Positions 33,009-48,686 of a stretch of DNA of 64,000 nucleotides are shown in pieces; the first letter of the stretch is position 1; every line of letters begins with the position of its first letter. A program made the translations under genes and the position numbers. The stretch covers positions 1 through 64,000 of the forward strand of contig ADNK01000533.1 of the NCBI GenBank assembly GCA_000320545.1, written 5' to 3'. Under the pieces are notes generated by a model. That model was not told where the DNA came from, made no database searches, and worked only from the letters and a program-made list of their open reading frames with translations. This stretch comes from Bigelowiella natans CCMP2755 (lineage: Eukaryota > Protista > Cercozoa).

Positions 33009-34311
33009 ATGGGCTTCGGAAACAAGAAGAATGTGCCTTTCCACTCAAAGGTAGCAGCGGGCGGCGTATCAGGTGTGATGGAGCTTTGTTTTTTCCATCC
33101 GGTTGATACTGTGGCGAAGCGCCTGATGACTAACCGGGGAGGGGCCTCGCTTAGCACAGTGGCCTTCGGTGCAGGGCTGGCAGACGCGCCCGTTGTTACC
33201 AAATGGATGTCTCTTTACCCTGGGTTCCAGTTTGCGACCGCATACAAAATCATGCAGAGGACATATAAATTCAGTATGCAGCCAGTCGCGTTCGAATTCC
33301 TGCAGAAAAGGCTCGACCAGCCGAAGGTATCCTCTTTTGTATGCCGGTTGGCAGCTTCGCCGGTGCTGCGGAACAGGCACCTTAGCACAGCCTGATAGTC
33401 AAAAAAATCCAGAATGCGCGTAGTAGTTCACAGCCTGATAGTCAAAAAAATCCAGAATGCGCGTTGTAGTTCACATCCTATTGTATTATTTTTGGTTGGT
33501 GGAAAGGTCCTCACTCAAGCACTTGCCGGTGCATGTGTCGGGGCTGGGGAGGTAGTTCTCCTCCCATTTGACGTGCTGAAGATCCGTTCCCAAACGAACC
33601 CCGAATCTGTAAAAGGTACCAAACGTGTAAAATCCCCTCCCCTCCCCGCCCCCCTTAAACGCGGATCAGTTCTATGAAAAATAAGAGTTGAGATGCCGCT
33701 GTGGTGGTGGTGATGGTGGTGGTAGTTCTCAGCAGCAGCGCGCTGAGATGATCCACTTTCGTGCGATAAGTGATGCGCCTATGTGAGGTTAACAATTCGC
33801 TTGTCGCGGGGATGTACTGACGATGGCTTCTCTCTACCTTCCTCCTGTCACACACGCGCCACCGCGCTCATTAGGAAGGGGAATGCTCCAGATACTGGTG
33901 AACGAGAACTTGACTCTCTACAGAGGCTGGAACTGGACTATCGCGCGGAACGTTCCTGGATCGTTCGCCTTGTTCGGGGGAAACTCTCTCGCCAAGGCTA
34001 TGCTGGGCTTAGACCCTTCCATGTCGGGACAAGCAACGGTGGCTCAGAACGCCTTCGCGTCCATCGCCGGCGCGACCTGCAGCATTACTGTCGCGGCGCC
34101 GATGGATGTAATCAAGACACGAATTCAGCAGAACTCGATGAAGGAGATATCAGGCGTGAAGCTTGTTACTGATCTTGTGCGCGAGGAGGGTTTCTCAGCA
34201 TTCTTCAAGGGGTTAGGGCCTAAGATTTTAGTCGTTGGACCAAAGCTCGTGTTTTCAATGACCATTGCGCAGAGCGTTCTCTCCTGGTTCGCACGGAGAC
34301 AGGAGGCGTAA
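33009..34311 (+). CDS. GGC1: Mitochondrial GTP/GDP carrier, 3 coding exons
   Basis: FHPVDTVAKRLM, YKIMQRTYKF, LLPFDVLKIRSQTNPES, LYRGWNWTIARNVPGSFALFGGN and GPKLVFS closely match yeast Ggc1 motifs. Confidence 0.93.
33386..33475. repeat. 43-bp tandem duplication in a GGC1 intron
   Basis: cacagcctgatagtcaaaaaaatccagaatgcgcgt(a/t)gtagtt occurs twice with one mismatch. Confidence 0.95.
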
Positions 34312-35121
34312 TTCTTCGCCTCAGCTGTGTAGCCGTTCCAGCTGTGGTGGCTTTCATCTTCGTTAATTGCATCTTCTCTGTGATTTAATACTCACAATAA
34401 TGTAGATGTTTATTTCGCGCATACACGCTCTACACATGCGGCGTGCGAATAACTGTCTGTACTTAGGTTTGGCATAGGCAGTCATTCCAGTACGCACATC
34501 TAAACATGCAGTAGCGTAGCTATTTTACACTTTTTGCAAGTTATGTCCCAACATATGATGGCCACACCATTCTGTACGACTTAGATAATTGTTTAGTAGC
34601 TTTTTGCTTTGCTATATGTGTGCTATACGCTACGATGGCCTACACATCAGCACTAATAAGCGCATGAAGTCATTTCAAACAAAGGCTAGTCACTCCGATA
34701 CTGCTGTACGTGCGTTCATTAATTTACGGACGCTACTATTGCTGATCCACGTGACAGTGCATTTTTGATGTATGTGCGTTTCATTTGTTTTTCTAGAATG
34801 TGGTTCATGCATAGCTACGATTCATGTTTTGGACTGCTAGCTACAAGTGCACGTAGCGTGTACATCGATGCAATGTGCACAATGATTGGCTATGCACGCT
34901 TTGACATGCTATATGAAGATTCACCAGCACTATAATGTGCAAGCTGCGGGTACGTAGCGCTTTCATTCTGCCCTTGTTAGCTTCCAATTATGTCATTTAT
35001 ATATTTGTAAGCGCATTCCCTAATTTTGCTACGCAATCTGCCACACGCTCGAGTGTATACGTGTCTTTTTCTCTTGAGCAATTAATATTATGTATGTGTG
35101 TTACATATACATATATATAAA

Positions 35122-35180
35122 TATATATATACGCTATGCTACGACTAAGTTATATATATACGCTATGCTACGACTAAGTT
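35122..35180. repeat. ~29-bp tandem duplication
   Basis: tatatatatacgctatgctacgactaagt occurs twice; a related tgctacgacttaag lies near 35331. Confidence 0.85.
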
Positions 35181-35381
35181 GAGCAGCAACACCATGAACA
35201 GCCCATCCCCATAATGTTATATGCATGATATACTCACTATTAGACTTTTTATCAGATGATATATGTCTTACATATCTACATAACAAAACAGGAATCATGC
35301 ATGCACCTAATGACATGTCTGAGCAAGCGATGCTACGACTTAAGCCCAGCATTAGGGTAAAATTATAATCATATAACGCTA

Positions 35382-37331
35382 TCATTCTTTAATTTTGTCT
35401 ATCTTCCTATCATTTCCCTCATTATTTCTTTTCCGAATCGCCTTCCTGGCGCGGGCGAGCCATTGCGCCCCTATTTGTTTGCAGGCCATCCAAACCCAAA
35501 GTTTGAGTTTGGGCGCTTTCGCAAGGTTTTTCGATTTTGCCTACCAAATCATAGAGATATGTGTGTGTGCTTCACTCGCATGCGGAGATAGAAATGCGTG
35601 TGTAAGACGGACACAAGCGGTGCAACTATGTATGTGCAATATCTAGAGCGCGCTTGCACTACTTTCGCATCAGAGCCGAATTCTTGTTCCAGAAGCCTAG
35701 CCTCCTCTTCCGAAAAATTAGCGAGTACGGACCTGCAAACGGATCGATTGGATGTGAGGTGACGGGCCATAACAAGTGGCTAGTGGTGGATGAGTGATGA
35801 AGTTGAATTCCCAGCCCAAAAGCAACCATAGAAATAATGATACGTCCATTCACATTTTTGTGTATGTTATATTATTTTTTTGAAAGCAAAAAGATAGGTT
35901 ATCTGGGGTTTGGGGAAGGGAAATAGTGGATGGTATCCTACTTGGAGATAATCCGAAGGGTGGCCTCATAGTGACACACCCAAACAAGATCGTCCTGGAT
36001 GGTAGTGGGAGAGAAGGGAGGGCAACCAAGGGCGAAATCAAACGATCAAACCATAAGCAGGGGAGAGGAAGTGGGATGGAACATCAATAAGTGTCATCAC
36101 ATAAACGTAAATGTGGGTTAGTTGCAATTAGCTGCTGGCAAATTAGGAGGAGCGGTCGATAGTGCATACCTTTTCGTCGAGAGTGACCTCTAATGGTGAG
36201 ATTATTCTGCATTCAGAGAGGAAACGGGGAGGGGGAAGGAATTGCTCATTAGCTCGAACATGACATGACAGTAACAATAATCTTCTAGCTGATATGACAT
36301 TCTTCCCCCATTCTTCCTCCCCCCCCTTCCACTCTCTGCTCCTTTTCCCTTCCAGTCCTTATCCGAAACATTCCTCCAATCGGAGCCATGATAAGACCGA
36401 CAACAGCAACAATGATTTCATAATAACAGAAGTGTCATAGTAAATATAGCATTCCCGGCAAACCTATCACCTCGAATTCTTTTTTGAAGAAGCGGCCTTA
36501 TACTCTTTGTATTCACGGGCCCGCACTTGGAAAACACAGAGCGGCAGATTGGACTTGAGGTGCGCCATCACAATGAGAGCCTTAAACACATTGTCGTTCT
36601 TCCCGTCGCCGCCGCCCTTGTTTCTCAACGCGTCCGTGCTGACCCCTATGGGCTGCCCGACGCTTGAAAGGAGGTGTATCACATCCGTCGCCGGTAGGAA
36701 CCCGGTGCCTTGCGGATCAAAGGCGCTCCAGATGTCCCGCCACTCGTGGAGGGACTCCAATGAGCTCTCGCTGTCCTGCGTCGCGGTACTGAAGCTTTCC
36801 AGAATCACGGCGATGAACAAGTTGACCTGTAGTGTGGAGAGAGGAATGGAAAGAGAATCGAAACAACCGTTGGCGGTCGAGGCATTTCCCATCGCTGCAC
36901 GCGCGCTTTGCATATACGACTTTGTGTGAAGATATGTACTCATATTATGACCCTCCCGCTGAACGCCCATTTATTAGGATGGTGCCCGTGCTCTTACCAT
37001 AACGAGCGCGACGAAAATCATGAAGGAGATGGTGTAGACCGGCGACCACGGATAGCCACAGTTGCCTTCGGAGTCGGAACACTGGCCACTGGATTCATCG
37101 AGCGAGAGCCCCGTTTGAATCTCTTCCCAGGAATCGCCCGTCGCTAGCCGCCATAGCGTGAGGATGGAGCTGGGGAAGCTGGAGAAGTTCTCATACTGAG
37201 ACAGCCCTGCAGCAGCAGCAGCAGCAGTCATAGGAACGGAGCAAACCGACAGCAGAAGGAAGGAATGAAGGAAGGGAGAATGCTACGTCAGAGATGATAC
37301 ATAGAGCTCTGCACTCCTCAGCCATGCAGAA

Positions 37332-37369
<38 letters not shown>

Positions 37370-39687
37370 CGCTCGCTCGCGCGACGTATGCACCTGGGTC
37401 CGCCCACGCGATCTTTCCGAAGAGGTTGACGCCCAAGATCGCATATATGTAGAAGATGATGAAGATCAGCGAGCCGACATTTATCAGCGAGGAACTCGAC
37501 TGCAGGAGCGTATCGAAGAGGCTGCGCAGCGCCTTCACTCTTGCCACCACGCGGAAAAGCCGCGCTAGCCGAAACAGCCGGAGCGCGCTCAATCCACCCC
37601 CATCTGCGAGACCGTAGGAGCCGAGCGAGATCAACACCACAACGAAGTCGAAAATGTTCCATCCGCTGCTAAAGTACATCCTACAGCCCTGCTCGCCGTA
37701 TCAAGAGAGGGGGAGAGAGAAGGAGCGGGAGGGGGCCGGGGAGAGTGAAAGGGAGAGGGAAAGAAGGAATAGATTAAGAAATAAGTGGCAAATCTTGAAA
37801 GCAGCCGCTGTGCGATGTTGGATGTGTGCATTGCCCATGGTGTAATATGGGCTGAGACGAAAGCAACTTGGTGGTTAGTGATTAACATTCTAGGTCTGTG
37901 AGGGGAGGGGGGGTTGGAGGGGAGATCGAACTGCTACAATTGCTTTGAGAGCATATCTACACGTCCCTATCCTTAATCATCACTTGCGCACGGCACAACA
38001 CATATGAGAACCAACCCAGGCGGAAAGTTTGATGACAACTTCGAGGGAGAAGATGACGTTGAAGAAGATGTTCGACATGAACACGAACACTGATAGCCTG
38101 GGATATGCAGATGACATTCGTATAAATATGCAAATCTTGAACGTAGAGAACAAGCTGCTGATGCGAAATGCCCATCATCATCAACAGCAGCACGCACAAA
38201 CACACGCATAAACACATATACGGGCTTCGATGACCACCAAGAAAGATCTACGGCTGCCACCGGAGCATGGCAACGGCTACGACTAAGGAGAAGCACTCAA
38301 AAAGACACTTTTTGGAAAAAATAACCCACTCCTGCGGCTCCTGATAATGCTGGGAGGCGGTGATGAGCGCATTCAGGCCAATGCAGGTCAGAATGAAGGA
38401 CTCGAACATGAACTCAGGGTTGTTTGGCTGCCCAACGAGCCGATAGAAATACTTGCAGAGATAGCCGTGGTTCAATGGGGACGTGTTCTTCGGGAGGCGA
38501 GTCCTGGACGCCAGCTTACTGTCCCTCTTCATTCGCCGCTGTGTCGGTAGAAAATTACTCGTCAGTTGTAGTAGTGATAGTAGTAGTAGTAGTAGTAGTA
38601 GTAGTAGCAGCAGTAATGAGCATGCACATGACACAAACAGCAGCATATCGCTGCAACCGCCGAGTATTTGGAACGGATAGAAAAGCTTCTTTCGCTGCTC
38701 TACGGACCATGTTGGCCATGTAAGAGAGCAGCAAGAAAGTAACGATTGTGTTTGTCTCCCCCTAAGCTATGCAAAAAGTTGTTGTTCATGCTGCTATTTC
38801 CCCTCATTTTCTTCTCGATGAAGCTCCACCTGTTCCTCCGTGAGGAATGCCGAGCCGTTGAACTGCTGGTGTAACTTATTGAACTTATCGATGAGGACGG
38901 CCACGAATAAGTTCATCGCAAACATGGAGGACAAGAAGATGAAGATGATGTAGAACAGGCCCCAGGCGGGCGCATGATTCCGGGAAGGCTGCATCTCGAC
39001 GCCAACCTTTGTACGCACACGTGCAAGTCTCACATTCAGGATTTGTTCCACCAACATTTCTACTTGTACGGTGGCCAGGTCTCGCAATCACATACGCGTG
39101 TTCTTAGATATATTGATGTATTGGTGGTAGTAGTAGTAGTAGTAGTACCGCATCTATGCTCGCATACATAATCACGTTCCAGTTGGATGTCGTTGCCACG
39201 CGGAAGAGCGTCAGAAACGCCTCGTACATGTTGTCGAAGTTGAAACTGTTACACACATCATTGCAAAAACACAAAAATTACAAAACACAGCCGTTTGAGC
39301 GGTGCGGCGAACAAACGGATGGCTCATCATATGTCATCTCCAAGCATCAACACCGTCCCCGTGAGACGACGGCACGTACTCGGCATTTTTCCACTGGCCG
39401 CCGCGCGACAGGCATTCCGCCTTGTCCCTGACGTCAGGAATGGTGCAGGAGAAGAATTTCCCCTTGAACTCGTCCACGCATAGAATAGCGAATACCACGA
39501 ACAGCACTACAAGAAACAGGGCGATGTTGGCAACAGAAGGCATGGCTTCAGCCGTCGAGAGCAAGACCACCCTCGTGTTCCGCATTCGAACCTAGGAGAT
39601 GGGAAGGATGAGGGCGAGAAGAGAATCTATCGATGGAAGCGATCGCGCACAGCCTACCCATCTTCCTGATGATCATGCTGTATGTGG

Positions 39688-39732
<45 letters not shown>

Positions 39733-42140
39733 CAGCAGCAGCGGCAGCAACGTCAAAATCAAACAACGAACCAGAATGCGCAGGGGCCTGAAAGCACGAG
39801 ATATCCTCAGGAATTCAGCTCCAGGAAGGAACGAAAGGACGGAGAGGATGACGATCAGCCCGTCGATTCGATTGAACGCGTCTCCGAAATATGTCCCATC
39901 TATGGCGTACGCCTCAATGACCTCCTTCCTCGCATCTGTGAAGGTAGCATAGTGCGAACTGTCAGAGAGATTCCAAGAGAAAACCCGTTGACGTAGTCAA
40001 AGCTTGATGCTGTCTTGTATATAAGAGCTACTGCAGCATCATCATCAGCATCATCATCATCATCATCATCATTCTCGTCATCGTTATTTCATACTTAATG
40101 GGGGGAGAGGAGCCCACGGCATCGTCCTTGGGCCCGGACCCATTGCGACAATCTTGATGAGCATCTCCAGCGCGAAGACGATTGTGAATGCAATGTCCGC
40201 CCCGAAAAACGCCTGGATTATTTGTTATTTTGTTTTCGCTTTTTTTTTCTTCAGAAAGTTCGCCCCCTCGCTCCTCTCACAAGTTCCCCATGACCCACCC
40301 CGGCTCTTTCCGTGTAATATCTCTCGTGATTAGTGTTGTGGTGATGTGAATCTGAAATCATGCTGCTAATCATTATAACCACGACAACGACGTCGACTAC
40401 TACTACTACTACTACTGCACAACTGCTACTACAAATACCGGATTCGGCTCGTTCGAATGCGGGTCATCAATAGCAAGGATGATGCAGTTTATGGCAACCA
40501 ACATGCTTACGCCGTTCTTAAACCACCGCTTCTCTACGATGGCTATCAGCCTCTTGCGCAAAGGGTGGTCCGGCCTCATCCCAAACGACGTGATCATCGC
40601 TTTCTCCTGATGAGTTTTATTTAATTTGTTCAGATATACAGGGTGATATATTTTGTCAGGAGAGGGATGGCGGTGGTGGTGGTGTTTTAGGCAACGACGG
40701 CGGTGGCGCCACCACGCACTGCTACTGCTGCTAATACTGCCATTATTACTGCTGCTGCTCAAATTCTTACCCGTATCTGCTGCACCTCGATATTCGATAA
40801 GACGGAGGACTGCCGTCTCCTCATTCGGTGAGATGATGGCGAGTCCATTGACCTGCTTCTCCTTATGCTCTGCAGATGCGCTGTGGGCGATGGTGTTCCT
40901 ATTATCCCTGCAACTTCTCCTTGATGTTTCGTCTCCCCCCCCGCCAATCTTGAGGCTGTCCCCGCTTCTGTTGTTGCTTTTGCTGATGTTCGAAGAGGCA
41001 TTAATTCAATAGCCCTTGTAGTATTCTTTTTATTCTTAGGGGTATTTCTCCGATAGCCGTCCTTGTGGTCGTTATTACTCCTTTCGGGTGTTTTTGTTTC
41101 TGGAAAAAGACTTGCTGCAGAGGAAAGTCCACTAGTACCTCCTTCGGATATTGGTTTCCGTACTCCTCCTCCTTTTAGTATCATCTCAGGGATGTTTGTC
41201 TGGAGAAGATTGAGGCTCTCAGCCTGCTTTGGTGACCTTGGTGACGACATCCCGGAGAAAGGTTTCGCTGCGGAGATCGAAGGACTACTGTGGCCGGGTG
41301 AAAGAGATTTGCGTCTGAAGATATTTATTTTGGAGAGAACGGAGTGTCGCTTTTTCTCCGCCTTCTCGAGTTCCTTCCGGTCCTTCTCGCCCAAGTAGTA
41401 CTCATACTGCATGCGCTTGATCTCCTTCTGACGGTCCTCAATTTGGGTCTGGCGTTTCCCCTGAGCAGGATGTAAAATAAGCAGCATTGCACACAACACG
41501 CACGCATAAGGAAAGACATATGCATTCTAGAAATTCGATACTCATGTACGACGATCGACACCGCGTGTTACTATTGCCGTGCTAGTACGCACGCACACTG
41601 CATCATTTTGCAAGAAGAAAGTGCTATCACTATTGCACCTCCACCAACACTGCTGCCATAACAGATTCAAGAAGGAGCAGCTAATGTACTACTCACTCTC
41701 ACCTCGACGACTTGAATCTTGATGATCTCCTTTGGATCTGTGTCCTTGAGCATTTCCCGCATCGCTATGTCCCTGGCTATTGATACCTAGAACGAAGGTG
41801 AAGGGAAGAGACAAAGAGCGACAGCAGGACGTGTTTTTACAGAAAAGGTAGGCGACTGCTCGCTATTGTTATTTCCGTTGGCGTCTCCTTCCCCTCCTCC
41901 TCTTCCTCCTCCTTCTCATCGTCGTAGCAATCCAAATTTTTTGCTATAGTCGTGGTGGTGTTACTACCTGTAGCTGCTCATCGTCTTGGAACTGGATCAG
42001 CAGCATGGCGATGAAGAGGTTTACGATCATGAAGTCGCCAAGAACAATCAGCGACACAAAGTAGAGGGGCGTGATGCGGGATGTTTTGGCCGTTATTTCC
42101 CACATCACATCTGGCCACGAATCGCCACTGAAAGAGTAGA

Positions 42141-42183
<43 letters not shown>

Positions 42184-42257
42184 AAAGGCGCCAGAATGCA
42201 ATTAAGATTCAGATAATTGCACCAGCGGATGGCCACATATGCACTTATTAATATATA

Positions 42258-42300
<43 letters not shown>

Positions 42301-44169
42301 ACACGTGTATAAATGCTGTCTCTGTGTGCATTATGAACATGTGCGCGTGATATATTGTAGTAAAATGCTTGTGTTTGTCTCCTTGTCGCTCCGGACGAAG
42401 AGAACCTCGTTATTGTACCTGACGCATTGAAAGACGAGGAGGAACGATGCCCATAAGTCGTCAAAGCTCCACCGTGATGTCGACTCGGTTAGTTTCCCGG
42501 CGAACAGCTGCACGCCTAGCACCTGATGTGTGTAGAGGGTGGAGAAAGTGAAGGCATTGTGTTTGCATCGTTGACACACGTTTTCAAGATGGAAAGAATC
42601 TTCCCCCATCCATCTCGACGATGACAAAGAGGAAAGGCGGGACGACTGATGAAGCGGACCAACAACTTCTTACCGCGAACATGAAGAGGAACACCATTAC
42701 GAGTAGAATCAAGTACATCACCTTCGAATCACAACATCCAACGTGGTAAGAACGGGGGGGGGGGGGGAGGCGAAGGGTACACGGGTACAGAAAGCCCACA
42801 TCTCCATCATTTACGCGACTATCGCCCCTATGCCATATGCTAGCCGCACATCAGCAGCAAAAGCTACAGCTACAGCAAGTACCTGGACCAAGCAATTGAT
42901 GATGACCACGAAGAGTTTTCTCAAGTCGCGCACGTTGTTGAACAGCTTGAAGATCCGCAGCAGCCGCAGTGTCCGCAGGCCCGAAACCTGAGACAGAACC
43001 GTGTCGTCAAATGGTATTGGAGTCTACTTCGCGATATCTATTTCGTGCGTTGCGGGTGCGTGGCGGGTGCGGCATGCATGCATACATGCAAGCGTAGGCC
43101 GTAGTATGGGTGAGGTACGATTGGCTTATTCTTTCTCTAGATTCTGTCGTGGTGGCATAAATTCTAGGACTACTACCTGGTTGGCGTTCGGGATGAAAGA
43201 GATTAGCACGATGAACGCATCGAAGCGGTTCCATGGGTCGCACAGATATCCACGTAGCCCCAGCCCCGCCAGCTTGAGCAGCATCTCCACCAGGAACACC
43301 AATGCGCATGCCTGCACAGCGGATGACAGCAGAGAGACAACGAGAATGGGTGGAGGTAGGAGCATTGCGGTAGCGGAAAGGGGAGGGGGCGGAAAAGAGA
43401 CAAAAGCCACTCATCAATCGAGTAGTTTAAGTGTTCATTCGATTGGTTTTGGTTTTGGTTTTGGTTTTGGTTTTGGGTGTGGGTGTGGATGTGGGTGCGT
43501 GTGTAGTCGTTTCTTCTTCCTTACAAAATTGATTTCCTCAATGAATTTCTCTTCCGCCGTGGAGATTCCGTAGTAGTTGTACGAGAGTGCGGCTGTGTTG
43601 AGCAGGATGACAAGGTTTACAAAGATCTTCATCCACATCGATGAAGTCACAACGACAAAGATGCTTCGAAACACGGCCGGCTTGTTCTGAAGCCAGAGGG
43701 TCGGATATCTACCAATGCCAACCAGCATCACCATGGGGAAAAATAAAACGGATGAGGAAATTGTGATCGTGTGCGCGAGTGAGGGTAAGTGCATGCATTT
43801 GTTCGTGTGCACGTGTTTTGCGGGTAGAGGTGGGTTGATGGTGAAAGCAGGCCACGTCTCGCAGAGCCGTCGATCCGCAATTTATTGAGACGTTCGAGGA
43901 CCGCAGGAAAAAGACGAAAAGGTTCGGGCGACGGGGAGGGAGGAGGGGGGGACAGACGGTGGAAATCCCAACCTCACGCTCCAGAAGGAATGTATCATCG
44001 AGAGCGCGTTGCGCTCGGTCTCTGTCGTTTTTTCCAGCCAATTCTTGAGAAACTCGAGTCGGATATTCTTCAGCCTGCCCTGTATCTACAGGTGTCATGC
44101 AGCAGCAGCAACAACAATCAAAACGAGAAAAATCAATGATTCCGACGAGAGTGGTAAGATAAATCAACA

Positions 44170-44210
<41 letters not shown>

Positions 44211-46754
44211 TATGTATGTGTGTGTGTGTTATTTATATCTTCTTACCTCTTGCGTGTGTGTGTGTGTGTGTGTGTGTGTTTATGTTTACGTGCATGCGCA
44301 CAAGCATATTATACCTTGTCTACAATGACCCTGTTATGCAACAACAGCATTTCGTTGTACCCGATGTGCTCGCTAACCACCATGTTAATGTTGTTCTTCA
44401 GCTGGAGAGCTTCGCGGTTACTATACTTATTTTCTCGAGCGAAAAAGGTCGATTTGCTCCCCCCCTTGCGCGCTACGAGGCCGCTGTTATCCAGGTCCCT
44501 GTCCGAGCGACTAGCAGTGATGGCGTTCTTACTGCTGTCCATCCTCCTTCCTGCTACTTCTTTGGCGTATTTTTGGCTAAACCACTTCCCACCTCCCTCC
44601 GAGGCTTCAAGTGCGCTGAACGCCGGTACCTGGAAGAATTTTAGCTCGAACTCGTCGAGGAATTCGCCAATTATATGATCATTGACGGGCCAAAATCCGC
44701 GGTGCTCAAGGAGGAGTTGTTGCAATGGCCCTCCGCTCGTCGCAATCTTCTGTTCCCCTCTGCTGCTGCCCTGTCTGCTATGGCTCCGCAATCGAAAACC
44801 GGCGGGCATGACCTGTTCGAAAGTAATACGTTGGAATTGGGTGACGACGGCCCCATGGGCAAGCAGGATAATATTGATGGAAGTGGAATGATGATGACGA
44901 CCATGTTGATGAGGATTATCATGATAATAGTGATGATGATGCAAATAACATCAGTGATGGAACAACAGTCAAGCCACCCCCCAGACGGCTTACTGCAAAT
45001 ACAGCTGCTAGTCAAACATGCTCTCACTTCATTATCACATCGGGAAGTCACTCACCGGGCAGCCTTCCGACCGCAACCAGAGTCTATACTTCAGCTCTAT
45101 TTGACGCTTTTGTTCGATGATCCACAGCGTAATATCCTCAGACACTGCGGCCAAGACCTGAATTTTGAAGGTTTCCTCCGGATCTTTGGAATCATCCGTG
45201 CTAGGGGCATCTTCAAAGGTATCCTTCTCATCATCAGCGTCCAGAACTTTGCCACACGATTCAGTGGGTGCAGAGCGAGGAGAGGTGGTGGGAACGCCGT
45301 CTCCGCTCGCATTGTCATCATCTTCTTCACCGCCATTCACCCCGCACTTTTCCTCCTTCAGCTTCTTCTTCTCCTGCATCTCCTGATGTTGCATCTTCGC
45401 CTGAGGAAAAATGGTAGATGGATGGGAATAACGACACATGGAAGGGCATCTATGTGTGTGTATGCGTCTCCTTGCGTGTCAGATATTCACTAGAAAATAA
45501 CGAAAACCAGAATGTAACAAAGACAGAGGCCTTGTATGTGAAAGAATGACATATAGCATATCGTTGTCACTTTTCTGCTTTTTACACCCCGCGGGGTCAC
45601 AAATAGCCCACTTCTCGGCGCTACCTTCTCATTCTCTGCCCCTGTATGTAGCTGCCGGAAAGCGTCCTTGATGGCCGCAAGCATGAGGTTGAGGGCGAAG
45701 AAGGACACGAGAAGGATCAGGAAGAAGAAGTAGAACCAGACGAAGGGGGACACTCCATCCATCACCGTGTGCAGGATGCTGCCCCACCCGCTCATCGTAA
45801 TCGTTTGAAATATCTGCGCATAGGAAAGACACAACAACAAGCTTATGCATGCTTCCGTGCGTCTTGTGCGCCGAACGAATCGTTATCGTCACCCGAACCA
45901 CCACAGCCATCAGCACATATAATGTCGTCCTCGTCATCATTACTACTACAAACTACTTCTCCTTAGACCTGTAGCAACGCAGACGGAAAATCGTCGAAGC
46001 TCACCACCCCATAGAAGGGGTTTCCGGCCTGCGAAGGGGGAGAGAGATGGCAAAAGGAGATGATCATGCTACGCTGCGTGCACTACTCTAAGACACAACT
46101 GAAGTAGCACTACTATACTTCTAGTAGTAGTACCCATGCTCTCCACCCCATCCCCCCCCTTACCTCGGGTTTGCACGTAGACCCATGCGGACACTGAAAG
46201 AGCCCTGCGGACGTCAGGCTACAAATGCGATCCAGTGGCAGAGTCTCCCCGGACGCATCGTCGAAGCAGCGCTGGCGCAAGATGCCCTTAAACAAGGTCA
46301 CCCCGGTGATACCGAAGAAGAAGAGAAGAAGTGACAGCACGAGCGATACACGGCCAATTGCCGCGACGGAGTAGAGAAGGACGGTCACCAGGGCTCGGAG
46401 TTGTGGGACACGCTTGACCGCCCGGAGCGGCCTCAACACTCTCACCACGCGAATCGCTGAGACGTTCGGCACGCTAGGGATGGCTCCCAAGCAGCCAAAC
46501 ACAACGACGACGAAGTCGATATAGTTCCACCCGTCGCGGAAGTAACCGGGACTCGATGCGTAGTATTCCTCTGGCATACCTGTCCATCCGTTCCATGGAC
46601 AGGGAAAGGGGAGGGGGAGAGAGTAAGAGTTGTGCTTGCACAACATGAACACAATGGAGGGTCGTGTGATGGTAGTAATAACGATGATAGTGTGCTTGTG
46701 AAACCCGCGTCTGTATGTGAATGCGTGCGTGCATGCATGTGTGTATGCGTGTTT

Positions 46755-46791
<37 letters not shown>

Positions 46792-47280
46792 TGAGCATAG
46801 ACTGTCCTTATATATTTTTCTGTGGAAAGTCATTCTTGTTATGAACTCATTAGTTTACTACTAAAACGACTACTAAAACAACAACAACATTAACAACAAC
46901 TACTGCTACTACTACAAAAGTCATTGCCAAAACCATACCGGGGAGCTCCTCCTCACTTTTAGTCTCACGCCAAAGCCCAAGCGCCAGTATTTTTAAGAAC
47001 ATCTCTATGATGAAGATGGAGAGGAAGATAGGGTCCAGAATTCGAGAGACCTTGACTTCCCAGTGGGTCTCAGGATTCAACGGGTTTGAGAAGGCAAGCA
47101 GCACGCAGTTGAAGAGAATTAAGATCAAAATTACGTTGTCGAACCACGCCTGTGATGGTAATAATAATGATCACGATTATCATAACTATCCTCCATTGTG
47201 AGGTCCAACGTCATCCGCATAATTTCACACAACATGGAGCTTTGCAAGGTGCCATGAGATCACTACTTCTTCTTCTCCTT

Positions 47281-47313
<33 letters not shown>

Positions 47314-48117
47314 TTTCTAATCCCCACCTTTGAAGTGATATTCACACGTGCCCAGCGGCTCATGTATTCATACCAGCCCATCGATTGATTCAGGGCCCTT
47401 CGCTTCTCGCTCCTATCTTCCTTCGGTGTTCGCGGAGATTTGCCGCCATGACCAATCCGCAGCATTTGAAAGATAGAAGGCTCTTCTTTTCGGAGCTTAA
47501 CGTCAACAGTAAGCTTAGGTGCGTCCTTAGTGTCGGGCAGGTTGCTGCCGCTGCTGCTATTGAGAGCTTTCTTCCAAGGCTCTCTTCTTCCAAGCGGGGT
47601 GACGCCGAAAGCAAATGTCTTGTCCTTTGCTCTGTTCTGTTTCATTAGATTTAGGGAGTAGCGCCGTTTCTTTGTATCCCCCTTATCCAACATCGTGGAC
47701 GACGAGGACGATACCCCTGAGAATGACTGTCTTCGTTCACACCTCAACTTCTCGTCTGAAGATCTCCTGCCATGTTGTGTTTCTGAATAGCAAATTATGA
47801 ATGTAGGGGAATTCAGTTCGATGACTCAGGTTTGACCTTTACTCCGGGCCACATACTCTCTCCCCTCCTTTCTCCCTTTTGACATCTCATCTATCAGTAG
47901 CAGGACAACTTTGAATACCTAGTGAGACGTCCCTCTGCTCCGCCCGGAAACCCGAAGGGGTGATGCTGCGGCTAGATTCGAGACAGGACTCCTCCAATAA
48001 GCCAGCAGAAGATCTTCCATCCATACCTGTTGTTTCAGAAGATTGTCCACTCCTGTTCTTCGATGAAGTACTCTTTCGTCTGCCATTGGGGATAGCCAAG
48101 GGCGAGGTGTAACTCAT
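35382..48117 (-). CDS. Four-domain (4x6TM) voltage-gated Na+/Ca2+ channel alpha subunit, many exons
   Basis: Four S4 segments (IRVVRVLRPLRAVKR; LRTLRLLRIFK; LRISRAFRPLRIL; LRLFRLARLFRVVAR), four P-loops, S6 NLFIA/NLFVA motifs, C-terminal EF-like WSAFDPQGTGFL and an IQ-like tail. Confidence 0.93.
43446..43499. repeat. (GGTTTT)n grading into (GGGTGT)n intronic hexamer repeat
   Basis: Visible directly. Confidence 0.9.
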
Positions 48118-48686
48118 ACTTGAGAGCGGGCTAGTATCGAGGGAACAAGACCGCTCCTGCTACTACTACTATTACTACTGTGAACTATCTTGGAGGAAGT
48201 TGCCTCTCCTTATTAATTGGCACTGGCAAGATCTAGTACTTGGGGGCAGGGATGGGCCAGCCAGCTGCGGCCATCCACTTAACATGCTGCCGGCGGCTTC
48301 TGGTAACCGAATCCGTTTCAGTTTTCGCAGCTTTCACGGGAAAACTTCTTGACGGGAGAACAACGCGTAGTCTTGAAGAACGACATAGCTTGCATACGCT
48401 ACCTGCATCGCGGTTGTCCCGAGGGTTTACCTCTCTGCGACATAAAAAGGGTTGTCGCTGTTGGGATATGGTGGCTGTTATACAATTTTCCTTTCCCGCA
48501 AAATCTTAGAGGCCTTGTCTGTGGTTGTTTCCCGCCTGAAAAATATTCCAAATTCGGAACAAAGTCTGACAACAGTCTGACAACACTCGCCCTTAACGAA
48601 CTCTTCATCTTCCGAGCGATCCCTTCGCTCAGGAACCCCACCCAGGCGCGGGAGGTACGCGAGCCTCAGCCGCTGAGGCTGGAAAA

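What the first reader, a model, noticed from the sequence alone, without database searches (positions are those of the whole stretch)
37133..45792. Four-domain voltage-gated channel with an unusual S-D-S-D selectivity ring
Seen: the four P-loops (T/S-x-X-x-W) read DI FQTITM-S-GW (Ser 45790-45792), DII FQCVSG-D-SW (Asp 42121-42123, motif spans an intron), DIII FRVATT-S-NW (Ser 39185-39187) and DIV WRLATG-D-SW (Asp 37133-37135). All four S4 sensors keep their R/K arrays. Established: known rings are EEEE (Cav1/2), EEDD (Cav3), DEKA (Nav1), DEEA-type (Nav2) and EEKE/EEEE (NALCN). Inference: a twofold-symmetric ring with two Asp and two Ser, and no Glu or Lys, is not one I recognise. It implies a wider, less charged filter, possibly an independent route to Na+ or non-selective permeation. 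The two Ser use different codons (AGC, TCC), which argues against a single sequencing error.
Basis: partly seen in the sequence, partly recalled or inferred. Interest (0 to 1): 0.85.

Follow-up and report, generated by a model that had tools for sequence, protein, structure and literature searches.

The report
Protist voltage-gated channel, Ser-Asp-Ser-Asp filter
This expressed gene of the marine alga Bigelowiella natans encodes a nerve-type four-domain voltage-gated ion channel whose pore ring reads Ser-Asp-Ser-Asp, and it belongs to a widespread but untested protist channel family with a conserved Asp-Ser-Asp signature that may pass sodium rather than select calcium.

Summary
All four P-loops are at the stated codons on the minus strand. 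In an alignment where Nav, Cav3, NALCN and Cav1 controls read DEKA, EEDD, EEKE and EEEE, this protein reads S/D/S/D.

Spliced transcript contigs from three studies confirm the exons carrying the DII, DIII and DIV filters, and show no variant bases. No alternative P-loop exon exists in the locus.

The gene is the public model JGI Bigna1 69667 (Bigelowiella natans), so the sequence itself is not new.

The ring is not a one-off. It is a derived variant inside a well-supported clade (SH-aLRT 97) of channels from Rhizaria, a stramenopile and dinoflagellates. That clade keeps Asp(DII)-Ser(DIII)-Asp(DIV) and varies only DI (E, D, A, T or S). B. natans has at least four further paralogs of this type and two EEEE-type genes. 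Symbiodinium reached SDSD independently.

A Lotharella relative, probably the orthologue, was in a 2018 survey, but no paper I could search discusses this filter or tests it. The scan also noted an A/D/S/D paralog elsewhere in this genome.

Sodium-permeable or poorly selective conduction is plausible: only two carboxylates and no Asp next to the ring. It remains untested.

The parts
35385..48117 (-). Whole gene for the four-domain channel: public model JGI Bigna1 69667 = P0167, 2156 aa, 32 coding exons
   Evidence: P0167 maps exon by exon onto the window. It has four Ion_trans repeats, E 6e-203. It is named by EukProt/JGI as Bigelowiella natans.
36996..42522 (-). RNA-verified block of 14 exons: 42419-42522, 41968-42127, 41703-41786, 40771-41460, 40439-40606, 40095-40212, 39772-39935, 39380-39591, 39149-39245, 38830-39006, 38330-38538, 38016-38097, 37394-37688, 36996-37206
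   Evidence: Spliced contigs of 6704, 5615 and 2406 nt from three studies cover it. All 13 introns are GT-AG. The joined exons give one open frame of 923 codons.
45784..45810 (-). DI P-loop FQTITMSGW; filter Ser = AGC at 45790-45792
   Evidence: Exon 45625-45813 has canonical splice sites. Homologs read FQTITM-A-(S/T)W here. Not covered by the reads call.
42419..42432 (-). DII P-loop, first half: FQCV plus the first two bases (AG) of the split Ser codon, at the end of exon 42419-42522
   Evidence: The exon is in the transcript contigs.
42115..42127 (-). DII P-loop, second half: T of the Ser codon, then GDSW; filter Asp = GAT at 42121-42123
   Evidence: Exon 41968-42127 is in the transcript contigs.
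39179..39205 (-). DIII P-loop FRVATTSNW; filter Ser = TCC at 39185-39187
   Evidence: Exon 39149-39245 is in the transcript contigs.
37127..37153 (-). DIV P-loop WRLATGDSW; filter Asp = GAT at 37133-37135, followed by EE at +3/+4
   Evidence: Exon 36996-37206 is in the transcript contigs.
46389..46460 (-). DI S4 voltage sensor SAIRVVRVLRPLRAVKRVPQLRAL
   Evidence: Nearly identical to Lothag1 S4-DI in PMC5824947 Table S2.
42928..42984 (-). DII S4 SGLRTLRLLRIFKLFNNVR
   Evidence: Its first 16 residues are identical to Lothag1 S4-DII. The exon comes from the public model only.
39571..39813 (-). DIII S4 FLRISRAFRPLRIL|VRMRNTR, split by intron 39592-39771
   Evidence: Both exons are in the transcript contigs.
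37515..37580 (-). DIV S4 RLFRLARLFRVVARVKALRSLF
   Evidence: The exon is in the transcript contigs.
38839..38850 (-). III-IV linker motif AFLT, in the context FNGSAFLTEEQ, at the position of the Nav IFMT inactivation particle
   Evidence: It has the hydrophobic-hydrophobic-hydrophobic-Thr form described in PMC5824947.
36641..36745 (-). EF-hand-like / GPHH region after DIV S6
   Evidence: Weak Pfam hits below the gathering score: GPHH E 1.9e-4, EF-hand_6 E 3.3e-3.
38260..38329 (-). Stretch treated as coding in the public model but spliced out in RNA; it adds 23 residues (1715-1737 of P0167) to the DIV S1-S2 loop
   Evidence: The RNA joint runs from 38097 to 38330. Alignment of the RNA-based translation to P0167 shows a 23-residue gap.

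Best explanation
The locus is the expressed Bigelowiella natans gene for a four-domain (4x6TM) voltage-gated cation channel.

It belongs to a protist clade, so far seen in Rhizaria, a stramenopile and dinoflagellates. The clade's pore ring keeps Asp in domain II, Ser in domain III and Asp in domain IV. Domain I varies (Glu, Asp, Ala, Thr or Ser). In this paralog domain I is Ser, which gives S/D/S/D.

Shown:
- gene structure, expression and splicing;
- the ring register;
- membership of the clade;
- paralog content of the genome.

Inferred:
- Depolarisation moves four intact S4 sensors and opens the pore.
- A hydrophobic AFLT motif in the III-IV linker gives Nav-like fast inactivation.
- The ring carries only two carboxylates, on the diagonal pair DII/DIV. 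None of the four positions next to the ring is Asp (they are G, S, N, S).
- For these reasons the filter should bind Ca2+ weakly and pass monovalent cations.
- In sea water the channel would then carry mainly Na+ with some Ca2+, acting as a sodium-permeable or poorly selective excitability channel rather than a Cav-type calcium-selective one.
For: - Four Ion_trans repeats. The protein aligns collinearly with solved Cav3, Cav1/2 and Nav structures at E 5e-138 to 1e-109, and with NALCN only at about 1e-45.
- P-loops and codons confirmed. Register controls give DEKA, EEDD, EEKE and EEEE in the same columns.
- Spliced transcripts from three studies, with 13 GT-AG introns, one open frame and no variant letters. 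The 6704-nt contig length fits the full public CDS plus UTRs.
- No other P-loop-like ORF in a six-frame scan of 35000-48500.
- Clade support: FastTree 100; IQ-TREE LG+C20 with the filter columns removed, SH-aLRT 97.
- D/S/D is kept in about 25 further sequences and in B. natans paralogs.
- S4 arrays and the AFLT motif.
- A published classification links absence of Asp at HFS+1 (the residue next to the ring) to sodium permeability. In single-domain channels, Asp at the ring plus a small neutral neighbour goes with non-selective Na+/Ca2+ conduction (PMC10120453).
- Chlorarachniophyte members have lost the DII neighbour Asp that other clade members keep (D-D-W versus D-S/A-W).
Against: - No member of the clade has been recorded electrophysiologically, so selectivity is inferred from sequence rules derived mostly from animal and bacterial channels.
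- Two Asp plus Glu-Glu at DIV +3/+4 and Asp at DII +4 could still give useful Ca2+ affinity.
- PMC5824947 notes that extracellular turrets also shape selectivity.
- Strict conservation of D/S/D shows constraint, but not which ion it serves.
- The DI exon was not checked against reads.
- Subcellular location is unknown.
- No 3D model was made.
Confidence: 0.6

Rival explanations
1. It is a calcium channel after all. The two ring aspartates, helped by the acidic residues just above them (DII +4 Asp, DIV +3/+4 Glu-Glu), bind Ca2+ well enough to make a Ca2+-selective or Ca2+-preferring voltage-gated channel. It would be functionally equivalent to other protist Cav homologs used in flagellar signalling.
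For: - The best-scoring solved relatives are Cav3 and Cav1.
- Cav3 works with Asp in two ring positions (EEDD).
- Basal clade members keep Glu or Asp in DI and Asp next to the DII ring residue. The family may therefore have begun as calcium channels.
- The post-S6 EF-hand-like region resembles Cav.
Against: - Only two carboxylates remain in the ring, and none of the four neighbouring positions is Asp.
- B. natans keeps separate EEEE-type genes that could serve Ca2+ entry.
- The published rule links loss of the neighbour Asp with sodium permeability.
Confidence: 0.25
2. The protein no longer works mainly as an ion-conducting voltage-gated channel. It would be a leak channel, or a voltage sensor coupled to other proteins, in the manner of NALCN or skeletal-muscle Cav1.1, and the odd ring would reflect relaxed need for selectivity.
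For: - The terminal branch is somewhat longer than those of its nearest relatives: 0.46 versus 0.28.
- DI differs from all close relatives.
Against: - All four S4 arrays are intact. By contrast, voltage-insensitive NALCN, Nax and Cch1 have charge-poor S4 segments (PMC5824947).
- D/S/D is strictly conserved across distant lineages, which argues for a working pore.
- The protein is far from NALCN in sequence.
Confidence: 0.07
3. The ring is an artefact. Possible causes are an assembly or annotation error, a pseudogene, or unseen alternative P-loop exons that supply Glu or Lys.
For:
- The public model does contain one wrong donor site.
Against: - Three independent transcript assemblies match the genome at DII-DIV with no variant letters.
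- One open frame runs through 14 verified exons.
- No second P-loop-like ORF is found in the locus.
- Homologs from other species show the same D/S/D, with Ala, Thr or Ser at DI.
- The two Ser codons differ (AGC, TCC).
Confidence: 0.03

Closest known systems
Lotharella globosa FVCC 'Lothag1' (MMETSP 120725_1) in Pozdnyakov et al. 2018, PMC5824947
   Same: S4 segments are almost identical: DII matches over 16 of 16 residues and DI differs at one residue. It is probably the orthologue or a member of the same chlorarachniophyte subclade.
   Different: Its filter is shown only in that paper's Figure 3, which I could not read. The text never discusses an x/D/S/D filter. It comes from a different genus.
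Chlorarachniophyte, Paulinella, Cafeteria and Symbiodinium x-D-S-D channels (P0001, P0002, P0005, P0040, P0111, P0057, P0004 and others)
   Same: Same clade, same D(II)-S(III)-D(IV) signature, and Trp at +2 in all four loops except DI of Paulinella and DII of Cafeteria, which have Phe. The Symbiodinium members also read S/D/S/D.
   Different: DI is Ala, Thr, Glu or Asp in most members. Non-chlorarachniophyte members mostly keep Asp next to the DII ring residue (D-D-W); a few have Ala. Here that residue is Ser. All are uncharacterised. The Symbiodinium one is auto-named 'CACNA1A, partial'.
Cav3 (T-type) calcium channels, EEDD ring
   Same: Best solved-structure match (9ayg_A, E 5e-138). Four-domain architecture, and Asp used in the ring.
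   Different: Cav3 has four carboxylates plus an Asp next to the DII ring residue. This channel has two carboxylates and no such Asp. It does not group with Cav3 in the trees.
Nav1/Nav2 sodium channels (DEKA, DEEA)
   Same: Four intact S4 segments. The III-IV linker has a hydrophobic triplet plus Thr (AFLT versus IFMT). The DIII-DIV half of a basal clade member (P0039) scores as well against vertebrate Nav as against Cav.
   Different: No Lys in the ring. DII has Trp at +2, whereas Nav has it at +1 (one residue shorter). It is not in the Nav clade.
Green-algal SESE channel (Pleodorina starrii P0131; SESE listed in PMC6259924 after Verret et al. 2010)
   Same: Alternating Ser/acid/Ser/acid ring with Ser in DI and DIII.
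   Different: It has Glu, not Asp. It sits inside a green-algal EEEE clade, far from the x-D-S-D clade, so it is an independent origin.

Membership tests
[quoted passage not shown] | Four tandem 6TM Ion_trans repeats in one polypeptide | tested here: met
   Pfam PF00520 with four stretches, E 6e-203. Collinear matches to solved Cav and Nav chains.
[quoted passage not shown] | R/K at every third position in S4 of all four domains | tested here: met
[quoted passage not shown] | Re-entrant P-loop with T/S-x-[ring residue]-x-W in each domain | tested here: met
x-D-S-D protist clade (defined here) | Asp in DII, Ser in DIII and Asp in DIV at the ring position | tested here: met
x-D-S-D protist clade (defined here) | Groups with the other x-D-S-D sequences when the filter columns are left out of the tree | tested here: met
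   SH-aLRT 97, IQ-TREE LG+C20 PMSF, 58 rows. FastTree 100 on 168 rows.
High-voltage-activated Cav1/Cav2 | EEEE (or EDEE) ring with Asp at DII HFS+1 | tested here: not met
   The ring is S/D/S/D and DII +1 is Ser.
High-voltage-activated Cav1/Cav2 | Alpha-interaction domain in the I-II linker and an IQ motif | not tested
   Only a weak GPHH/EF-hand-like hit after S6. PMC5824947 reports the interaction domain only in animal HVA Cav.
Cav3 (T-type) | EEDD ring | tested here: not met
   Not in the Cav3 clade.
Nav1 | DEKA ring with Lys in DIII | tested here: not met
   DIII is Ser.
Nav1 | Hydrophobic inactivation motif in a short III-IV linker | tested here: met
   AFLT in FNGSAFLTEEQ. The motif is widespread outside Nav (PMC5824947), so it is not diagnostic.
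NALCN / Cch1 | EEKE, EKEE or EEEE ring, charge-poor S4 segments, and close sequence kinship | tested here: not met
   S4 segments are charge-rich. NALCN structures match only at about 1e-45.
Sodium-permeable four-domain channels in the 'beacon' classification (PMC10120453, Class I) | No Asp at HFS+1 in any domain | tested here: met
   HFS+1 is G, S, N and S. The rule is quoted. It is a sequence rule, not a measurement.
Sodium-permeable four-domain channels in the 'beacon' classification (PMC10120453, Class I) | Measured Na+ permeability | not testable with these tools
   Needs electrophysiology.

The most novel reading that the evidence does not exclude
The x-D-S-D clade would be an unrecognised family of voltage-gated sodium (or sodium-preferring) channels in SAR (stramenopile, alveolate, rhizarian) protists. 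It would have reached Na+ permeability by stripping charge from domains I and III and from the residue next to the ring, not by inserting a lysine as animals did.

Chlorarachniophytes, with at least five paralogs in B. natans, would be the most derived case. These channels, not EEEE-type Cav homologs, would carry the fast inward current of marine protist excitability.
Probability: 0.3. Interest if true: 0.8.

Novelty: new variant of a known kind. Interest (0 to 1): 0.55.

Why it matters
How four-domain channels tell Na+ from Ca2+, and how often sodium conduction arose, are long-standing questions answered almost entirely from animal channels. This family offers several things.

- **A natural charge series.** One conserved family runs from E-D-S-D with a neighbouring Asp, through A/T-D-S-D, to S-D-S-D without it.
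- **An in-genome comparison.** Several states sit side by side in one genome, next to ordinary EEEE channels.
- **A direct test.** Expressing two or three of these paralogs would test current selectivity rules on a filter nobody designed.
- **A possible physiological role.** The work could identify the channels behind sodium-dependent excitability in marine protists.
- **A correction to annotation.** Automatic names such as 'CACNA1A' or 'T-type calcium channel' for these proteins are probably misleading.

Tried and rejected
- **Alternative P-loop exons.** A profile of 21 P-loops run on the six-frame translation of 35000-48500 found only the four known loops and their split halves. Rejected.
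- **Register shift.** Rejected by the control rows in the 168-sequence alignment.
- **Sequencing or assembly error.** Rejected for DII-DIV by transcript contigs from three studies.
- **Uniqueness of SDSD.** Rejected: Symbiodinium channels share it, and about 25 further sequences share D/S/D.
- **Kinship of SDSD with the published SESE ring.** Rejected: they fall in different clades.
- **P0001 and P0002 as B. natans paralogs.** Rejected: neither matches any paralog locus closely.
- **Literature searches.** Searches for SDSD, ADSD, the same letters spaced out, dinoflagellate or chlorarachniophyte four-domain channels, and Verret 2010 found no discussion of this filter. The supplement of PMC5824947 gives S4 and inactivation tables but no filter table.
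- **Not done.**
  - Structure prediction: the protein exceeds 1200 residues and a sub-range has no reference.
  - Searching with my own joined spliced model: exons were searched one by one by reference, then the public full-length model returned by the database (P0167) was used. The RNA-corrected joined CDS was translated only locally, to check its frame.
Full report
**Observation.** Translating the minus strand at the stated places gives these P-loops:
- DI FQTITM-S-GW, Ser AGC at 45790-45792.
- DII FQCV|SG-D-SW, Asp GAT at 42121-42123.
- DIII FRVATT-S-NW, Ser TCC at 39185-39187.
- DIV WRLATG-D-SW, Asp GAT at 37133-37135.

The DII motif is split by a GT-AG intron (42128-42418). The Ser before Gly-Asp is a split codon, AG|T, so the motif reads the same after correct splicing. 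The DI P-helix is also interrupted by an intron just before IFQTITMSGW, with canonical sites.

**Expression and gene model.**
- Runs of the same organism hold about 45% of the words of 36900-42700, as expected for spliced RNA.
- Laying four runs on that stretch gave spliced contigs of 6704, 5615 and 2406 nt from three studies, with no variant letters.
- After resolving ambiguous cut positions, all 13 introns between 36996 and 42522 are GT-AG.
- The 14 joined exons form one open frame of 923 codons holding the DII, DIII and DIV filters.
- The raw-read RNA run added only ten reads.
- The DI exon lies outside the stretch laid. The 6704-nt contig length fits the full coding sequence plus short UTRs, which is consistent with the upstream model exons but does not prove them.

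**Identity.**
- Exons searched one by one are Ion_trans pieces.
- The DI S3-S5 exon, searched against 1.84 billion representatives, found collinear four-domain proteins.
- A search with the best of these returned P0167, the JGI model Bigna1 69667 (EukProt Bigelowiella natans P004329, 2156 aa).
- P0167 maps onto 48117-35385 of the window in 32 exons. The protein is therefore public.
- It differs from the RNA only by a wrong donor site that adds 23 residues to the DIV S1-S2 loop.
- I did not send a joined model of my own to any search tool. The joined RNA-based CDS was translated only locally.

**Register.** In a 168-row alignment, the four columns where P0167 has S, D, S, D read DEKA in Nav rows, EEDD in Cav3, EEKE in NALCN and EEEE in Cav1. 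All four loops have Trp at +2, as in Cav. A P-loop profile run on the six-frame translation of the locus found no further P-loop-like ORF, so there are no alternative filter exons.

**The family.**
- Among the best 150 representatives, about twenty do not read EEEE-like but x-D-S-D.
- They form one group: support 100 in FastTree on 168 rows, and SH-aLRT 97 in IQ-TREE under LG+C20 with the filter columns removed.
- Named members:

| Organism | Ring |
|---|---|
| Gymnochlora | ADSD |
| Amorphochlora | TDSD |
| Paulinella micropora | EDSD |
| Cafeteria | ADSD |
| Symbiodinium | SDSD |

- A further search added more EDSD and x-DSD sequences from environmental assemblies.
- DII-Asp, DIII-Ser and DIV-Asp are nearly invariant. 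The exceptions seen are Thr or Ala at DIII, and one Glu at DII. DI is E, D, A, T or S.
- P0167 is nested among ADSD chlorarachniophyte sequences, and the Symbiodinium SDSD group is sister to Cafeteria ADSD. Ser at DI therefore arose at least twice.
- The neighbouring clade in both trees is made of D-rich channels (DDEE, DEDE, DDDE) of diplonemids and a kinetoplastid. Only FastTree places it as sister. The Thecamonas (apusomonad) channel groups with it only in that tree, at sub-threshold support.

**Paralogs.** In the B. natans genome:

| Contig | Ring |
|---|---|
| C3151 | A/D/S/D |
| C3642 | A/D/S/D |
| C1679 | ?/D/S/D |
| C1167 | ?/D/T/D |
| C3708 | E/E/E/E |
| C3424 | ?/E/?/E |

This gene is therefore one of at least five x-D-S-D paralogs, and the only one seen with Ser in DI.

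**How it probably works.**

Shown:
- four charge-rich S4 segments;
- a short III-IV linker with AFLT at the place of the Nav IFMT particle;
- a weak EF-hand-like region after S6;
- best solved relatives Cav3, Cav1/2 and Nav at similar scores, with NALCN far behind.

Inferred:
- The channel is depolarisation-activated and fast-inactivating.
- By the established clockwise I-II-III-IV arrangement, its only ring carboxylates sit on the diagonal pair DII/DIV.
- The positions next to the ring are G, S, N and S, so it lacks the Asp that a published classification ties to Ca2+ selectivity or strong Ca2+ block. Neutral non-glycine neighbours go with sodium permeability in that scheme (PMC10120453).
- Within the clade, non-chlorarachniophyte members mostly keep D-D-W in DII, while chlorarachniophytes have D-S-W or D-A-W. 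Charge has been lost stepwise.
- I therefore favour a sodium-permeable, poorly Ca2+-selective channel (about 0.5-0.6) over a Ca2+-selective one (about 0.25).
- From my own knowledge, not checked here: neutralising ring glutamates in Cav1.2 lowers Ca2+ affinity by orders of magnitude, and Nav mutants with a two-carboxylate ring (DEAA) are non-selective. Both point the same way.

**Literature.**
- The 2018 survey of 277 four-domain channels included two Lotharella globosa sequences. The S4 segments of 'Lothag1' match this gene almost exactly, so it is probably the orthologue.
- That paper's text discusses lysine-, arginine- and histidine-containing filters, DDDD and TEND. It never mentions x/D/S/D. 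Filters are shown only in its Figure 3, which is not held.
- A 2018 review lists SESE among odd non-animal rings. I find SESE in Pleodorina inside a green-algal EEEE clade, unrelated to this family.
- No paper in the searchable library mentions SDSD or ADSD rings.

**Verdict.** The finding is real. The gene is expressed and the ring is correctly read. It is not a singular oddity but a derived member of a conserved, widespread, undiscussed and functionally untested channel family. The sequence is public, so the novelty lies in recognising the family and its charge series. Its function remains an inference.

Noticed in passing
window 38260-38329 (-): The public JGI model (Bigna1 69667) uses a donor 70 nt downstream of the one seen in RNA. 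This adds 23 residues to the DIV S1-S2 loop.
   Followed up: yes
G000 contigs C3151:14461-23112, C3642:60794-66457, C1679:117782-121285, C1167:204-3300, C3708:157370-162116, C3424:139046-143000 (loci L005-L011): B. natans carries at least four more x-D-S-D type four-domain channel genes (two A/D/S/D, one ?/D/S/D, one ?/D/T/D) and two EEEE-type genes. C1679 and C3708 have very long open frames (1468 and 1681 aa) and so appear nearly intron-free, unlike this 32-exon gene.
   Followed up: partly
P0131 (Pleodorina starrii) and P0151 (Symbiodinium sp. KB8): Automatic names mislead. The SESE four-domain channel of Pleodorina is named 'Caveolin-2' in NCBI, probably from the gene symbol CAV2. A fragment of the Symbiodinium SDSD channel is named 'CACNA1A, partial'.
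   Followed up: no
P-loop alignment: Within the x-D-S-D clade the residue after the DII Asp is mostly Asp in the non-chlorarachniophyte members (Symbiodinium, Cafeteria, Paulinella and several unnamed environmental sequences), with Ala in a few, but Ser or Ala in all chlorarachniophyte members. DIV almost always has Glu at +3 (D-x-W-E).
   Followed up: partly
The DIII-DIV half of a basal clade member (P0039) scores about as high against vertebrate Nav channels, Nav1.9 among the first named hits, as against protist EEEE channels. Yet the whole-protein trees do not join the clade to Nav.
   Followed up: no
window 33009-34311 (+): A neighbouring gene encodes a mitochondrial carrier family protein (Pfam Mito_carr, E 9e-20 and 2e-5 on two exons).
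   Followed up: partly
window 37251-37390, 38563-38622, 39114-39155, 42140-42320: The introns of the channel gene are full of di- and trinucleotide microsatellites: (CA)n, (CT)n, (TA)n and trinucleotide (GTT/AAC-type) runs. The reads tool skipped several of them, which hid one joint (39007 to 39149).
   Followed up: partly
window 37050-37120 (-), DIV loop after the filter: An insertion of about 20 residues (LSLDESSGQCSDSEGNCGYPW), acidic and with two Cys, lies between the DIV filter and S6. It is probably a disulfide-bonded turret.
   Followed up: no
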